A stretch of DNA of 63,349 nucleotides, the filler included, from Octopus bimaculoides (lineage: Eukaryota), in the NCBI RefSeq assembly GCF_001194135.2. It is 4 parts of 4 records of this genome, joined end to end, with 100 filler letters (N's around TTAATTAATTAA, not from the genome) between each part and the next. Parts side by side here need not be neighbours in the genome. Positions count along the whole stretch, not along the records: positions 16,174 to 42,102 come from NC_068994.1; 3 more parts are not named here. The stretch is one strand, 5' to 3'. Shown here piece by piece: positions 23,629 to 41,489 of the stretch (its first letter is position 1; each line of letters begins with the position of its first letter). Position numbers and translations under genes: made by a program. The notes under the pieces were generated by a model. It was not told the origin of the DNA. It did not search any database and was given only the letters and a program-made list of their open reading frames with translations.

Positions 23629-23742
23629 TCAACATGCACATTTACGTATTTTGTCGTCTTTTACTTTGAATGGAGGTGAGTCGTTCAATTCTGCTTTGGT
23701 TATCTCTTCTGGAATGGTTAAGTTCGGGTAATATTGCGACAT
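23629..23742 (-). CDS. Rab GTPase terminal coding exon 7 (MSQYYPNLTIPEEITKAELNDSPPFKVKDDKIRKCAC*)
   Basis: Acceptor ccttctctatttacag| after a 100-nt intron. Frame is open and ends TGT GCA TGT TGA, a CxC Rab geranylgeranylation motif followed by stop. Confidence 0.92.
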   Translation of the reverse strand: MSQYYPNLTIPEEITKAELNDSPPFKVKDDKIRKCAC

Positions 23743-23842
23743 CTGTAAATAGAGAAGGTAATCGTAATTAGAAAGCCGTGACAACCACCACTAACAACAG
23801 CAGCAACAACAACAACATCAACCAGAAATGAGTATTACATAC

Positions 23843-23962
23843 CAACTGGGGATTGCAAATATCTGTGATGTGGTATGCCAACCGTTCAAAGACTAGCTGT
23901 ACGTTTTCACCGGTTTTGGCACTTGTTTCAAAGAACTCAAACGCCATTTCTCTCGAGGCTAA
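23843..23962 (-). CDS. Rab GTPase coding exon 6, 120 nt (LASREMAFEFFETSAKTGENVQLVFERLAYHITDICNPQL)
   Basis: Acceptor attattatttcag|, donor TTG|GTATGT. G5 motif ETSAK. Confidence 0.95.
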
Positions 23963-23984
23963 CTGAAATAATAATAATAATAAT

Positions 23985-24928
23985 AATAATGATTTTAAAT
24001 GTTTGTCACAAGGGCAGCTTGTGGGGGAGGGGATTAAGTCGATTACATCGACCCTAGTGTGTAACGGGGGAATTTGAACTCAGAACGTAGCGGCAGACGA
24101 AATACCTATTTCTTTACTGCCCACAAGGGGCTACACACAGAGGGGACAAACAAGGACAGACAAACGGATTAAGTCGATTATATCGACCCCAGTGCGTAAC
24201 TGGTACTTAATTTATCGACCCCGAAAGGATGAAAGGCAAAGTCGACCTCGGCGGAATTTGAACTCAGAACGTAGCGGCANNNNNNNNNNNNNNNNNNNNN
24301 NNNNNNNNNNNNNNNNNNNNNNNNNNNNNNNNNNNNNNNNNNNNNNNNNNNNNNNNNNNNNNNNNNNNNNNNNNNNNNNNNNNNNNNATGATGATGATGA
24401 TGATGATGATGATGATGATGATGATGATGATGATGATGATGATGATGATGATAATAATAATAATAATAATAATAATAATAATAATAATGATGATGATAAT
24501 AATAATAATTTTGAATTTTGGCACAAGGCCAGTAATTTCGGGAGGGGTAAGTCGATTACATCGACCCCAGTGCTCAATTGGTAATTATTTTATCGACCCC
24601 GAAAGGACGAAAGGCAAAATCGAGCTCGCCGGCATTTGAACTCAGAACGTAAAGACGGAAAGATCGCTAAGTATTTTGATCGTCGTCAGCTCACCGTCTT
24701 AATAATAATAATAATCCTTTCTAATATAGGCATAAGGCCTGAAATGTGGAGGAGGAAGATTGTCGATTACATCGACTCCCGTACCCAACTGGTACTTATT
24801 CTGTCGATCCCAAAAGAATAAATGGCAAAGTCGACCTCGGCGGAATTTGAACTCAGAACGTAGCGACGGGCGAAATACCGCTAAGCATTTCGTCCAGCGT
24901 GTTAACGATTCTGCCAGTTCGCTGCCTT
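23985..24928 (-). mobile_element. Cluster of at least four SINE B copies (one nested) in the Rab intron between exons 5 and 6
   Basis: Repeated gtcgattacatcgacc and gaactcagaacgta blocks separated by (ATA)n/(ATG)n runs and one gap. Confidence 0.9.
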
Positions 24929-24995
24929 AGAAGAAGAAGAAGAAGAAGAAGAAGAAGAAGAAGAAGAAGAAGAAGAAGAAGAAGAAGAAGAAAAA

Positions 24996-25264
24996 CGGTC
25001 CCCTTTGGTCATGACTGACCACGGGATTGCACCTAGAAAGTACCCCTCCTAGGCACAAGTCCGGGCAAGGTTGTTTATGGAAGACCAACAGTAGCCCATG
25101 TATACCAGTCTCTCCTCTCCACGCCACCAATGTTAGCCAACGAAAAGGCAAAGACCGATACAGCTTGGCACCAGTGACGTCGCAACTTGAGTGAACTGGA
25201 GCCACGTAAAATAAAGCGTCTTGTTCAAGAACACAACATACGGTCTAGTCCGAGATTCGAACTC
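24996..25264 (-). mobile_element. SINE family D (working label), LINE-like 3' end and (TTC)n tail
   Basis: Conserved-core-like block gagtgaactggagc...gtcttgttcaagaacacaac and a B-box remnant; ends at a (GAA)n run. Confidence 0.7.
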
Positions 25265-25389
25265 TCTCTCTCTCTATATATATATGCGTGTGAAGGCGCA
25301 TGGCTCAATGGTTAGAGCATCAGGCTCACCTGTTGTAAATTTCTCCAGTTATTATGTCATTCAGTTTGTTTCTTTCATCAGATACATAC

Positions 25390-25497
25390 CTTTTTGCCTT
25401 TGCTGGTAGAAACTTTAATTCGGTCTTTCAGATCGATTTTATTGCCAATCAGTACAATGGGTACTGGTTCCAAATGATTATGACTGTGTGATATTTC
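25390..25497 (-). CDS. Rab GTPase coding exon 5, 108 nt (EISHSHNHLEPVPIVLIGNKIDLKDRIKVSTSKGKK)
   Basis: Acceptor ttttctttttctctctgtag|, donor AAG|GTATGT. G4 motif NKID. Phase 0/0. Confidence 0.95.
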
Positions 25498-39171: not shown

Positions 39172-39534
39172 TGTTGTTGGCACTCCGTCGCTTACGACGT
39201 CGAGGGTTCCAGTTGATCCGATCAACGGAACAGCCTGCTCGTGAAATTAACGTGCAAGTGGCTGAGCACTCCACAGACACGTGTACCCTTAACGTGACAC
39301 AGTGTGACAAGGCTGACCCTTTGAATTACAGGCACAACAGAAACAGGAAGAAAGAGTGAAAGAAAGTTGTGGTGAAAGAGTACAGCAGGGTTCGCCACCA
39401 TCCCCTGCCGGAGCCTCGTGGAGCTTTAGGTGTTTTCGCTCAATAAACACTCACAACGCCCGGTCTGGGAATCGAAACCGCGATCCTATGACCGCGAGTC
39501 CGCTGCCCTAACCTCTGGACCATTGCCCCTCCAC
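39172..39534 (-). mobile_element. tRNA-derived SINE family C (working label), full length, 12-bp TSD
   Basis: AAATCGTACTGT at 39160-39171 and 39535-39546; tRNA-like head on the minus strand; (AAC)n tail. Confidence 0.93.
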
Positions 39535-40188
39535 AAATCGTACTGTACAGTTTTACAATCTATATAAAAGGAAATAAGAAGTAGATTTAAAGATAAAATC
39601 GAACATAGTAAAAAACCTTATCGAGCAACTTATCAAGGAAAAGGTATATAATTAGTTTCTACAACCATTGAGAATGAAAGAGGTGCAAACCTATTTTTTC
39701 CTTTGCAAACAAAAAATACCATAAATGCTTTAAAAAAAATAATGCAAAAATTTGTTATGATTTTATATTCAGCGTATCTAATCTAACTGAAAGAAGCATT
39801 ATGATTAATTTTAGACAAAGAAGTAAAAAATATTTCACCTAAAATGAAATTTCTGAAAATTATACAATGTTTAAATAGTAAATACCTCATAAACGGACTG
39901 TCTAAATCTGGTGTCGAGATTAATTATTGAGGTCTCAACAAAAAGATTCAGGAGCAAAAACTAACAAGGGGAAAAACAAAACTGCGAACAGCACAACGAA
40001 GATAATTAATTTTACACTGTAAGAAAGAAAGAAGTGGACGCTTCGGAGAAAGGTCCTTCACCCAATAGCAAGCAACGTAGAGGGGAAGGTGTTTGTATAT
40101 GTAGGGGAGTGTGCGAGCGTGCTATGTGAATGCGTGTATATAATAAGGAATATTGAAGAGGCTATTATGGAAACATTTCTGCCCTTAC

Positions 40189-40249
40189 CTGTGCTCCTCG
40201 GTATTGCATTTTTGTTATGGATCGGAAACGTTCTTGTCCTGCTGTGTCC
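40189..40249 (-). CDS. Rab GTPase coding exon 3, 61 nt (DTAGQERFRSITKMQYRGAQ)
   Basis: Acceptor tcgttgtttcag|, donor CAG|GTAAGG. G3 motif WDTAGQE and RabF3 RFRSIT. Confidence 0.96.
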
Positions 40250-40676
40250 CTGAAACAACGATGAATTTATGTGGTTTTAAAAAAATCAGTTATATACTTC
40301 AGTGGATTAAATAGCAAGTCATACAACAAGTAACGTAATGGCAATAGCAGTAAAGACTGCGGCAGTGCTGGATCATCGCCTTAAAGGGTTTAGTCGAACA
40401 ATTCCATTGCTTATCTTTTTAAAGTCTTGTATATGTTCGATCTTTGTGTATCTGTCAATTCTTTTTTTTTTTTTTTTTTTTTTTTTTTTTTTTACAGAAT
40501 GTTTGTGTGTATATGTATGTTCGTATAAGTCTGTATGTACGTATAAGTCTGTATGTAGAAGAGCGATGATTCGGATTACGAAAACTGACAAAAAAAAGCA
40601 AACAAAAAAAAAAGAAAAGAAAAGAAAACACAAACAGAACGACGAAAACGAAAAAAAAAAAAGAAGAAAGACTTAC

Positions 40677-40737
40677 CACACTGCTAGCTGAATTCTTGCA
40701 CCGTCGACATTGAATGTTTTTTTCACAAAGTCGACAC
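40677..40737 (-). CDS. Rab GTPase coding exon 2, 61 nt (GVDFVKKTFNVDGARIQLAVW)
   Basis: Acceptor catcttttcgtatag|, donor GTGTG|GTAAGT. Completes RabF1 IGVDF in frame with exon 1. Confidence 0.95.
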
Positions 40738-41270
40738 CTATACGAAAAGATGAAATGACACAGCTATGTGATGAGTGTGTGAGTGTGAGTGTGTATATAC
40801 CTTATATATATATACACACAATACACAAGCATGCATGCATACATACATACATACATACTTAAGTGACTGTTTGAAAATGTCATTAAGATGCTACTTCTCT
40901 GCGAGGTGTGATATTGTGGACAAAACATTATATAATACAATCCTTGGAGAGTATATTCCTGAAGATGAATATATATATATAAAGTTATAGTGATGTAGAG
41001 AGCATACTAAATCATAATATGAAAGAATTCCGGAGCAATGTTCTTGTCAAAACCCCACTAAGATGTTAGCATAACACATGAACAATAATAATTTGAGAGA
41101 AATAAAAGAAAGTATGTACAGTAGTGGATATCAGTTGCTCAACAAATCTTAACAAACTATCGGTCGCTCTCTGACAGGTTTGTGTTGGAGCCTATGGCAG
41201 TGAAGACCTCCAGGTTCTATGTTAACAACCATGTACCTCGGATGGTCGCATGATTACGCATAATACTCAC

Positions 41271-41406
41271 CAATGGTGGGCAACATACTGCTGCGAAACT
41301 CTCGCCCAACCAAACAGTTGATCAGTGCAGTCTTTCCAACACACGTCTCTCCTAATACCAATACTTTATAAGACGCATCAGCAATGTTGGAATGTGATTG
41401 CTCCAT
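41271..41406 (-). CDS. Rab-family small GTPase, coding exon 1 (MEQSHSNIADASYKVLVLGETCVGKTALINCLVGREFRSSMLPTI+G)
   Basis: G1 P-loop GETCVGKT and G2 Thr (PTIG). ATG at 41406 in strong context (actATGG). Donor ATTG|GTGAGT at 41270, phase 1. Upstream acceptor tcttttggcag| at 41490 puts the exon start at 41489. Confidence 0.93.
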
Positions 41407-41489
41407 AGTGAAGTCTGCTGTCACATCAAACCCGCTTCGGTACTTCAGCACAAACTCTGCTTTGTAGGGTGAAAGATTTTCGTGTAGAT
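41407..41489 (-). other. 5' part of the ATG-bearing Rab exon (5'UTR, or in-frame N-terminal extension)
   Basis: 83 nt between acceptor and ATG, with no stop in the Rab frame. Confidence 0.6.

What the first reader, a model, noticed from the sequence alone, without database searches (positions are those of the whole stretch)
23629..41489. Complete divergent 225-aa Rab GTPase gene almost invisible in the ORF track
Seen: seven exons (136+61+61+78+108+120+114 = 678 nt) join in frame through GT-AG introns to give G1-G5 and a C-terminal CAC*. Only exon 1 shows up in its coding frame in the ORF track. Established (recalled): the first five intron positions and the 61/61/78 exon sizes match the RAB8A-type gene structure. 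Inference: a Rab8/10/13/15-related paralogue diverged beyond easy orthology assignment, possibly lineage-specific.
Basis: partly seen in the sequence, partly recalled or inferred. Interest (0 to 1): 0.7.

Follow-up and report, generated by a model that had tools for sequence, protein, structure and literature searches.

The report
Already-annotated octopus Rab GTPase gene
The seven-exon gene is real, but it is an ordinary, already annotated Octopus bimaculoides Rab GTPase (RefSeq 'Rab-13-like isoform X2'); it belongs to an old, unnamed Rab8-related subfamily shared by cnidarians and many protostomes, so it is not a cephalopod novelty.

Summary
Seven minus-strand exons (136+61+61+78+108+120+114 nt), all with GT..AG introns, give a 225-aa Rab with G1-G5 motifs and a C-terminal CAC. 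All five assembly gaps lie inside introns 3-5 and hide no exon of this isoform. The gapless O. vulgaris locus has the same exons, and a spliced mRNA contig from a cephalopod-clade relative is colinear across every junction.

The protein is letter-for-letter RefSeq XP_014780380.1 (O. bimaculoides 'Rab-13-like isoform X2'), so it is not new. Isoform X1 adds a 12-nt microexon (IARK) that I located in intron 4.

It is not an orthologue of Rab8/10/13, RabX4, Rab35, Rab15, Rab3 or the EF-hand Rabs. It falls in a distinct clade (94% neighbour-joining bootstrap, about 95-bit HMM margin). That clade includes molluscs, annelids, nemerteans, a brachiopod, a rotifer, a priapulid and many cnidarians. No vertebrate or arthropod members were seen among named hits. 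Klöpper et al. 2012 held three members under three different ad hoc labels.

All six intron positions match mammalian RAB8A. 'Lineage-specific' and 'invisible' are wrong.

The parts
41271..41406 (-). Coding exon 1 (136 nt): ATG at 41406-41404, P-loop G1 GETCVGKT (41352-41329), G2 Thr44 (41277-41275). Phase-1 donor GT at 41270.
41407..41489 (-). Putative 5' leader of the first coding exon, behind a possible acceptor AG at 41491-41490. It has no in-frame ATG. The stretch is conserved in O. vulgaris, but so is the whole region.
   Evidence: The acceptor was not tested with transcripts.
40677..40737 (-). Coding exon 2 (61 nt): RabF1 IGVDF and the interswitch strands.
40189..40249 (-). Coding exon 3 (61 nt): G3 DTAGQ (40248-40234) and switch II RFRSITKMQYRGAQ. 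Gln81 (40206-40204) stands where Rab8A has the triad Tyr77.
30319..30396 (-). Coding exon 4 (78 nt): GIVLVYDVTNPSTFTHLSYWMNSINN (RabF5 and helix 3).
28347..28358 (-). Alternative 12-nt microexon ATTGCTCGAAAG (IARK), flanked by ag| and |gtaagt. It inserts into the helix3-strand5 loop.
25390..25497 (-). Coding exon 5 (108 nt): family-specific longer loop EISHSHNHLEPVP, and G4 NKID (25443-25432).
23843..23962 (-). Coding exon 6 (120 nt): G5 ETSAK (SAK 23923-23915), helix 5, and the family motif NPQL.
23629..23742 (-). Coding exon 7 (114 nt including TGA 23631-23629): hypervariable tail ending in the prenylation motif CAC (23640-23632). An internal alternative donor GTAAAA at 23664-23659, after ...PPFK, leads to exon 8 in the long-tail isoform.
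19795..20080 (-). Alternative terminal exon 8 (long tail ending ...CNC* in O. vulgaris and O. sinensis). Only its last 10 nt (T AAC TGT TGA, 19804-19795) are readable; the rest lies in the assembly gap 19805-20080.

Best explanation
This is the Octopus bimaculoides gene for a small Rab GTPase, already annotated as XP_014780380.1 ('Rab-13-like isoform X2').

Shown:
- A seven-exon, about 17.8-kb minus-strand gene with canonical splice sites.
- All G-box and Rab-family motifs are intact, and the predicted fold is a Rab fold.
- The C-terminus carries a CXC double-cysteine motif.
- There are at least two further isoforms: a 12-nt microexon, and an alternative last exon that is mostly lost in an assembly gap.
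- It is orthologous to a conserved subfamily found in cnidarians, lophotrochozoans and a priapulid. This subfamily is separate from Rab8/10/13, RabX4, Rab15, Rab35, Rab3 and the EF-hand Rabs, and shares all of its intron positions with RAB8A.

Inferred from established Rab biology, not tested here:
- The protein is geranylgeranylated on the CAC cysteines and cycles between a GDP form and a membrane-bound GTP form under a GEF and a TBC-type GAP.
- In the GTP form it recruits effectors through switch I, the interswitch and switch II.
- Because it derives from the Rab8 group, the most likely role is in a post-Golgi, exocytic or recycling route to the plasma membrane.
- Its partners probably differ from those of Rab8. 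The hydrophobic-triad tyrosine (Rab8A Y77) is Gln81 here, and Gln or His in most family members viewed. The P-loop glycine equivalent to Ras G13 is Cys22 here, and Ser in most other molluscs.
For: - Exon model and splice sites.
- Exact identity to XP_014780380.1, and a contig identical to GCA_001194135.2 CM046614.1.
- Pfam Ras, E = 1.2e-52.
- AlphaFold model: mean pLDDT 84, with most 10-residue blocks of the core (residues 11-190) above 90; TM-score 0.87-0.92 on target length to Rab4/2/3/8/1 structures.
- Same exons in the gapless O. vulgaris locus.
- A spliced mRNA contig (L008) that carries an identical 235-aa product indexed in 53 blocks of the Logan collection is colinear with CDS nt 19-678.
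- Orthologues at 82-88% (cephalopods), 55-70% (other molluscs) and 41-54% (other phyla).
- Neighbour-joining tree of 78 sequences over 163 columns, with references from Klöpper et al. 2012 (PMC3425129) supplementary file 4: whole family 94%, molluscs 98%. Family+RabX4 2%, family+Rab35 0%, family+Rab8/13 0%.
- HMM scores for the octopus protein: 260 bits against a profile of non-mollusc family members. This compares with 163-167 bits for Rab8/10/13 and RabX4, and 154 or less for the others.
- Lottia, Capitella and Nematostella each hold canonical Rab8-group and Rab35 genes in addition to their family member.
- Intron positions shared with Haliotis, Lingula, Nematostella and Tupaia RAB8A.
Against: - No transcript reads from O. 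bimaculoides itself were examined, so the junctions rest on the RefSeq model, on conservation and on an mRNA contig from a related species.
- The tree is distance-based only. No ML or Bayesian tree was run. Deep nodes are unresolved, and sister-group relations (RabX4, Rab8, Trichoplax 'Rab8') are open.
- The Klöpper reference rows are a trimmed alignment that I transcribed by hand. Only their length was checked: all are 217 columns.
- Absence from vertebrates and arthropods rests on two capped searches of 120 listed hits each, and many unnamed hits have no taxonomy.
- Cellular function, GTPase activity, prenylation and partners are inference only.
Confidence: 0.88

Rival explanations
1. It is the octopus orthologue of Rab13 or Rab8, as the RefSeq name 'Rab-13(-like)' suggests.
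For: Automatic names in several species say Rab-13-like or Rab-8-like. All six intron positions coincide with RAB8A. Rab8 is the next-best group for the family profile.
Against: Identity to human Rab8A/Rab13 and Lottia Rab8 is only 43-45% over the core, whereas Lottia Rab8 is nearly identical to human Rab8A. Family+Rab8/13 gets 0% bootstrap. The Rab8/10/13 HMM gives 163 bits against 260-348 for the family. Lottia has a canonical Rab8 and Rab10 besides its family member. Rab13 arose in vertebrates according to Klöpper 2012. The C-terminus is CXC, not the single-cysteine C-terminus of Rab8 and Rab13.
Confidence: 0.03
2. It is an orthologue of RabX4, the Rab8-derived metazoan Rab that vertebrates lost.
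For: RabX4 has a similar history (old, widely lost). It shares the 'A(T/S)YKVLVLG' N-terminus and the 'LSYW' stretch. The RabX4 HMM is marginally the best non-family score at 167 bits.
Against: Capitella and Nematostella each have both a RabX4 and a family member. Family+RabX4 gets 2% bootstrap. There is a 93-bit HMM deficit against the family profile. No insect sequence appears among the family-level hits, although insects have RabX4.
Confidence: 0.04
3. One reading: a cephalopod- or mollusc-specific paralogue diverged beyond orthology assignment.
For: Flat similarity to all solved Rabs, 119-139 bits. Automatic names are inconsistent.
Against: There are clear orthologues in at least seven phyla, and the clade has 94% support. 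The 61/61/78 exon core is shared by the Haliotis, Lingula and Nematostella loci.
Confidence: 0.02
4. It is the C-terminal Rab domain of a larger protein (EF-hand Rab such as Rab44/45/CRACR2A) whose upstream exons lie outside the piece.
For: The coding frame stays open upstream of the ATG as far as 41505, and an AG lies at 41491-41490. One bivalve homologue is named 'calcium release activated channel regulator'.
Against: Nearly all orthologues viewed start 8-20 residues before the YKVL strand, and a few models carry longer N-termini. The mRNA contig L008 has 732 nt of leader before its start codon. The Rab44/45 HMM gives 148 bits, and the tree puts the EF-hand Rabs elsewhere. No gene is called within 10 kb upstream in O. 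bimaculoides.
Confidence: 0.02
5. The model is an artefact of joining unrelated contigs across gaps, or the gene is a decaying pseudogene.
For: There are five gaps within the gene span. The P-loop (Cys22) and the triad (Gln81) are unusual.
Against: The gapless O. vulgaris locus is colinear with the same exons. The frame is intact with every catalytic motif. The protein is 96% identical to Argonauta over the core. The unusual residues are shared across the family.
Confidence: 0.01

Closest known systems
Rab8 / Rab10 / Rab13 (Rab8 group, supergroup I of Klöpper et al. 2012)
   Same: Same fold and the same G and RabF motifs. All six intron positions and phases match mammalian RAB8A (61/61/78 exon core). 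It is the next-best group for the family profile. An exocytic or post-Golgi role is the most likely analogy.
   Different: Only 43-45% identity in the core. It forms a separate clade. Tyr77 of the triad is Gln. The P-loop Gly18 is Cys. The helix3-strand5 loop is 6-7 residues longer. An NPxLM motif follows helix 5. The tail ends in CXC rather than in the single-cysteine C-terminus of Rab8 and Rab13. Lottia carries canonical Rab8 and Rab10 as well.
RabX4 (Drosophila CG31118 and relatives)
   Same: Also a Rab8-derived, early-metazoan Rab that is absent from vertebrates. It has a similar N-terminal 'ATYKVLVLG' and 'LSYW' stretch, and a CXC tail.
   Different: A distinct clade: Capitella and Nematostella have both. 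RabX4 keeps YYRGAMG and DFK(Q/E)K. Insects have RabX4 but were not seen among the family-level hits.
Rab35
   Same: Klöpper et al. labelled the Lottia orthologue 'Rab35_4'.
   Different: Canonical Rab35 (Lottia, Capitella, Nematostella, Daphnia) is a tight, separate clade (100% bootstrap). It is only 38-39% identical to the octopus protein, and its HMM gives 113 bits.
The unnamed clade itself (for example Lottia LOTGIDRAFT_232207, Lingula 'Rab-13 isoform X1', Nematostella 'NeVe_Rab8_4', Capitella 'CaTe_Rab3_8_10_13_27')
   Same: One-to-one orthologues with the same exon structure. Shared features: Y13, GE in the P-loop, DFV, (Q/H)(Y/F)RG(T/V)(K/Q)G, NPxLM, and a basic tail ending in cysteines.
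   Different: Cephalopods have a short tail ending CAC or CNC instead of the long Lys-rich tail with CC found in other molluscs. They have Cys22 instead of Ser or Gly, and octopods have the IARK microexon.

Membership tests
Rab family of small GTPases (Ras superfamily) | Five G boxes: GxxxxGK[ST], switch-I Thr, DxxGQ, NKxD, SAK | tested here: met
   GETCVGKT, T44, DTAGQ, NKID and SAK read directly from the sequence. Pfam Ras E = 1.2e-52.
Rab family of small GTPases (Ras superfamily) | Rab-specific RabF1-F5 motifs (IGVDF, KLQIW, RFRSIT, YYRGA, LVYDIT; Pereira-Leal and Seabra, recalled) | tested here: met
   IGVDF, RFRSIT and LVYDVT are exact or nearly so. QLAVW and QYRGA are variants (sequence).
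Rab family of small GTPases (Ras superfamily) | C-terminal double-cysteine prenylation motif (CXC, CC and the like) | tested here: met
   The tail ends CAC*. The alternative tail ends CNC* in O. vulgaris. Prenylation itself is not testable here.
Rab family of small GTPases (Ras superfamily) | Small-GTPase alpha/beta fold | tested here: met
   AlphaFold mean pLDDT 84. Foldseek top 50 hits are all Rabs, TM-score 0.84-0.92 on target length.
Rab family of small GTPases (Ras superfamily) | Binds and hydrolyses GTP; membrane cycle with GEF, GAP, GDI and REP | not testable with these tools
   Needs biochemistry.
Rab8/10/13 subfamily | Groups with Rab8/10/13 in a phylogeny, with high identity to them | tested here: not met
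   0% bootstrap for family+Rab8/13. 42-45% identity. HMM 163 bits against 260-348 for the family.
Rab8/10/13 subfamily | Shared intron positions | tested here: met
   All six positions and phases coincide with Tupaia RAB8A, and five with Dendronephthya Rab8A-like. I did not check whether other group-I Rabs share them too, so this may not be diagnostic.
RabX4 | Groups with Drosophila, Anopheles, Capitella and Nematostella RabX4 | tested here: not met
   2% bootstrap. Capitella and Nematostella have both genes.
Rab35 | Groups with canonical Rab35 | tested here: not met
   0% bootstrap, 38-39% identity, HMM 113 bits.
EF-hand Rabs (Rab44, Rab45/RASEF, CRACR2A) | N-terminal EF-hand and coiled-coil region before the Rab domain; groups with them | tested here: not met
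   Nearly all orthologues and the mRNA contig start just before the G domain. These Rabs form a separate clade, and their HMM gives 148 bits. An upstream exon outside the piece cannot be formally excluded.
Unnamed cnidarian-protostome Rab8-group clade | Monophyly, profile score, shared exon structure and signature residues | tested here: met
   94% bootstrap. 260 bits against a profile built without molluscs. 61/61/78/~105/120 exon core in Haliotis and Lingula, and 61/61/78 in Nematostella. Signature residues Y13, E20, V50, P186.

The most novel reading that the evidence does not exclude
The gene itself is known. The clade it belongs to may be an ancient Rab8-derived subfamily that has never been recognised or named. 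It is present in Cnidaria and many protostomes and apparently absent from vertebrates and insects. Its effector-binding triad (Tyr to Gln/His) and P-loop are altered. In octopods it is diversified by a 12-nt microexon in the helix3-strand5 loop and by two alternative prenylated tails. Klöpper et al. 2012 held three members under three unrelated labels (Rab35_4, Rab3_8_10_13_27, Rab8_4), which suggests the clade fell through that classification.
Probability: 0.4. Interest if true: 0.4.

Novelty: already known. Interest (0 to 1): 0.15.

Why it matters
For this genome scan it matters little: the locus is an ordinary spliced gene that RefSeq already models exactly. The by-product may be useful to Rab specialists. 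The automatic names (Rab-13-like, Rab-8B-like, Rab-3C-like, Rab-10, Rab-12, CRACR2A) are all wrong as orthology statements. The proteins form one coherent, old metazoan subfamily with no vertebrate member and no studied function. It adds a further apparent case, alongside RabX4, RabX6 and RabX1, of an early-metazoan Rab that vertebrates lost, and it could be studied in Nematostella or in molluscs.

Tried and rejected
- A tblastn search of the piece for the long alternative tail of O. sinensis and Argonauta found nothing. The exon turned out to lie in the gap 19805-20080.
- The newer O. bimaculoides assembly did not help with the gaps. The window piece is identical to GCA_001194135.2 positions 9305-35233 of locus L001, with the same N runs.
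- Rfam and tRNA scans of the piece found nothing.
- The sigma-70 promoter and terminator scan is irrelevant for a eukaryote, and its counts were at chance level.
- Two vertebrate Rab8 proteins (P0194, P0189) were not on record for locus retrieval. Tupaia RAB8A worked, but its model contains a duplicated-exon artefact.
- Four literature searches found no paper that names this clade or treats Rab evolution in molluscs.
- The 206-aa Ras-like gene next to the Nematostella orthologue is not Rab8, so it gives no evidence for a tandem origin.
- I did not use the third homologue search or the representative-library search. They give no taxonomy for most hits and would not change the verdict.

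
Full report
**1. What is in the sequence**

The gene lies on the minus strand. I located each proposed exon uniquely and joined them. The coding exons are:
- 41406-41271 (136 nt)
- 40737-40677 (61 nt)
- 40249-40189 (61 nt)
- 30396-30319 (78 nt)
- 25497-25390 (108 nt)
- 23962-23843 (120 nt)
- 23742-23629 (114 nt, including the TGA)

All six introns begin with GT (GTGAGT, GTAAGT, GTAAGG, GTAAGT, GTATGT, GTATGT) and end with AG behind a pyrimidine-rich tract. Their phases are 1, 2, 0, 0, 0, 0. The 678-nt CDS gives a 225-aa protein ending CAC*. 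The motifs are at the expected places: G1 GETCVGKT, G2 Thr44, G3 DTAGQ, G4 NKID, G5 SAK.

**2. The gaps**

All five N runs flagged for the finding lie inside introns: three in intron 3 (9792 nt, 1784 N), one in intron 4 and one in intron 5. No exon abuts a gap.

The newer public assembly does not help. The window piece is base-for-base identical to GCA_001194135.2 CM046614.1 and carries the same N runs.

The O. vulgaris locus (GCA_951406725.2, no N) settles the question. Its gene has coding exons 136/61/61/78/12/108/120/78/99 in the same order. The two loci are colinear at 76-95% identity over the whole span. No exon of the 225-aa isoform is hidden in a gap.

**3. It is already annotated**

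The exact 225-aa sequence is in the public collection as XP_014780380.1, 'ras-related protein Rab-13(-like) isoform X2' of Octopus bimaculoides.
- Isoform X1 (XP_014780379.1, 229 aa) differs only by IARK between exons 4 and 5. I found the matching 12-nt microexon, ATTGCTCGAAAG, once in the piece at 28358-28347, flanked by ag| and |gtaagt. It is conserved in O. vulgaris.
- O. vulgaris, O. sinensis and Argonauta models use a donor inside exon 7 (GTAAAA after ...PPFK, 23664-23659). It joins a further exon that encodes a longer tail, ending CNC* in the two Octopus species and CAC* in Argonauta.
- In O. bimaculoides that exon sits in the gap 19805-20080, outside the finding's range. Only its last 10 nt, T AAC TGT TGA, can be read at 19804-19795.
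- O. vulgaris also keeps the read-through ...VKDDKIRKCAC* unchanged.

**4. Transcript support**

I had no O. bimaculoides reads. An identical 235-aa homologue (82% identical to the octopus protein) is indexed in 53 blocks of the Logan collection, on contigs of about 2 kb. In the tree it groups with Octopus and Argonauta at 100% bootstrap. On contig L008 its coding sequence is uninterrupted. That contig aligns to the spliced octopus CDS (nt 19-678) as a single piece, but to the genome only as exon-sized pieces. The splice pattern is therefore used in a related species, and the ...KKCAC* ending is conserved there.

**5. What kind of protein it is**

- Pfam Ras scores E = 1.2e-52.
- The AlphaFold model built on 34 family sequences has mean pLDDT 84. 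Confidence is above 90 in most of the core and low only in the switch regions, the helix3-strand5 loop and the tail.
- The top 50 Foldseek matches in the PDB are all Rabs, with TM-score 0.84-0.92 on target length. None stands out: Rab4, 2, 3, 8, 1, 11, 43, 35 and 7 all appear.
- The sequence search of the PDB is just as flat: Rab3C 139 bits, Sec4 137, Rab18 135, Rab8A 135, Rab10 134. A true orthologue of a solved human Rab would be expected to score much higher.

**6. Relatives**

The single-sequence search found these identities:

| Group | Identity to the octopus protein |
|---|---|
| Cephalopods | 82-88% |
| Gastropods and bivalves | 51-70% |
| Lingula | 54% |
| Owenia | 51% |
| Tubulanus | 48% |
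| Rhopilema | 46% |
| Priapulus | 41% |

Their automatic names disagree with one another: Rab-13-like, Rab-8B-like, Rab-10, Rab-3C-like, CRACR2A, 'SOCS box domain-containing'.

A profile of 15 non-mollusc members (A1) added Lineus, Ridgeia, Capitella, Brachionus and many cnidarians. The cnidarians include Nematostella, Acropora, Oculina, Desmophyllum, Actinia, Dendronephthya, Paramuricea, Hydractinia and Clytia. Below about 240 bits the list turns into canonical Rab8 from all eukaryotes (about 236 bits). No vertebrate or arthropod appears among the named family-level hits.

**7. Is it an orthologue of a named Rab?**

Klöpper et al. 2012 (PMC3425129) derive Rab3, 10, 15, 26, 27, 34, 44, 45 and X4 from Rab8, and describe RabX4 as old but lost in vertebrates. 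Their supplementary file 4 is the alignment of this supergroup. I took 41 reference rows from it and checked only that all are 217 columns long. I then added 38 sequences with MAFFT.

*Neighbour-joining tree.* It used Kimura distances, 163 core columns, 78 sequences and 200 bootstraps.

| Grouping | Bootstrap support |
|---|---|
| Cephalopods | 100% |
| Molluscs | 98% |
| Whole family (34 sequences) | 94% |
| Rab35 | 100% |
| Canonical Rab8 | 80% |
| Rab8+10+13 | 72% |
| Family + RabX4 | 2% |
| Family + Rab35 | 0% |
| Family + Rab8/13 | 0% |

*Independent HMM test.*

| Profile | Score of the octopus protein (bits) |
|---|---|
| Non-cephalopod molluscs | 348 |
| Family members, no molluscs | 260 |
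| RabX4 | 167 |
| Rab8/10/13 (full-length sequences) | 163 |
| Rab44/45 | 148 |
| Rab15, Rab3, Rab1, Rab35, Rab27 | 125 or less |

*Paralogy within genomes.* In the Klöpper data Lottia has Rab8, 10, 15, 18, 27, 34 and 35. Capitella has Rab8, 18, 35 and X4. Nematostella has Rab15, 27, 35 and X4. Each of them has a family member in addition.

*Earlier labels.* Those three family members are labelled LoGi_Rab35_4, CaTe_Rab3_8_10_13_27 and NeVe_Rab8_4. The clade was therefore in that dataset but was not recognised as a group. Four full-text searches found no paper that names it.

**8. Gene structure**

I mapped exact exon chains for several genes.

| Gene | Coding exon sizes (nt) |
|---|---|
| Haliotis family member | 133/61/61/78/117/120/177 |
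| Lingula family member | 46/81/61/61/78/105/120/171 |
| Nematostella family member | 160/61/61/78/90/66/51/120 |
| Dendronephthya Rab8A-like | 124/61/139/90/117/90 |
| Tupaia RAB8A | 124/61/61/78/90/66/... |

On the protein alignment, all six octopus introns coincide in position and phase with Tupaia RAB8A introns. Five of the six also occur in the cnidarian Rab8A-like gene, which lacks the intron between the 61- and 78-nt exons. It fits a Rab8-group origin. I did not check whether Rab1, Rab35 or RabX4 share these positions too, so it does not prove a specific sister relationship.

**9. Features of the family**

The mapping to Rab8A and Ras residues, and their roles, comes from established knowledge; it was not tested here.
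- Four positions are nearly fixed in the family and rare elsewhere: Tyr13 (usually Phe), Glu20 (GE instead of GD in the P-loop), Val50 (DFV instead of DFK) and Pro186 (NPxLM after helix 5).
- Rab8A Tyr77, one of the hydrophobic triad that reads out effectors, corresponds to Gln81 here. It is Gln or His in most members viewed.
- Rab8A Gly18 (Ras Gly13) corresponds to Cys22 here, and to Ser in most other molluscs.
- Rab8A Thr72, the LRRK2 phosphorylation site, corresponds to Ser76.
- The helix3-strand5 loop is 6-7 residues longer than in Rab3 and Rab8. This is also where the microexon inserts.

From these differences I infer an ordinary Rab cycle with a set of effectors different from that of Rab8.

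**10. Verdict**

The novelty claim fails, because the gene is annotated exactly and is an ordinary orthologue in an old, widespread subfamily. What remains of interest is that this subfamily seems to be unnamed and unstudied.

Noticed in passing
window 19795-20080 (-): An alternative last coding exon of this gene (long tail ending CNC*) is almost wholly inside the assembly gap 19805-20080. Only its final 10 nt, T AAC TGT TGA, are readable at 19804-19795. This may be why O. bimaculoides RefSeq lists only the CAC-ending forms, while O. vulgaris and O. sinensis models have the long tail.
   Followed up: yes
window 28347-28358 (-): A 12-nt microexon (IARK) with perfect ag|...|gtaagt flanks, conserved in O. 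vulgaris. It accounts for RefSeq isoform X1. Its tissue specificity is unknown.
   Followed up: yes
window 18476-18711, 18779-18873, 24172-24279, 24550-24657, 24710-24945, 27831-27967 (inverted), 41725-41883: At least seven copies of a dispersed repeat of about 100-230 nt, 73-89% alike, in the introns and flanks. It looks SINE-like, but there is no tRNA or Rfam match. Its translations recur in the ORF list (for example ...FRRGRLCLSSFRG).
   Followed up: partly
window 32938-33081 and 36099-36242; also microsatellites throughout (for example 31400-31560, 38490-38700, 34440-34720, 20080-20370): A 144-nt direct repeat (94% identical) whose two copies each lie next to an assembly gap in intron 3. 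Very dense di-, tri- and tetranucleotide repeats flank most gaps, which probably explains why the assembly breaks there.
   Followed up: no
L002 1-9981 (O. vulgaris), corresponding to window 41407-41489 and upstream: The O. vulgaris annotation has a 119-aa gene model whose last exon ends at a TGA 20 nt before this gene's ATG, in another frame.
   Followed up: partly
L004 2478-7898 (Nematostella): A divergent 206-aa Ras/Rab-like gene lies 2 kb upstream of the Nematostella orthologue on the same strand. It is only 32-40% identical to Rab8 in the matched stretches, so it is not canonical Rab8.
   Followed up: partly
L001 vs L002 (O. bimaculoides vs O. vulgaris loci): The gene spans 17.8 kb in O. 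bimaculoides but 41.5 kb in O. vulgaris up to exon 8. For example, intron 1 is 533 vs 3733 nt and intron 6 is 100 vs 4090 nt. The neighbouring sequence stays colinear, so large insertions or deletions have occurred in the introns since the species split.
   Followed up: no
Klöpper et al. 2012, supplementary file 4: Trichoplax 'TrAd_Rab8' has family-like features (YKVL, FYRGTSG, YWM) and joins the family in 48% of bootstraps. It may be a placozoan member rather than a Rab8.
   Followed up: partly
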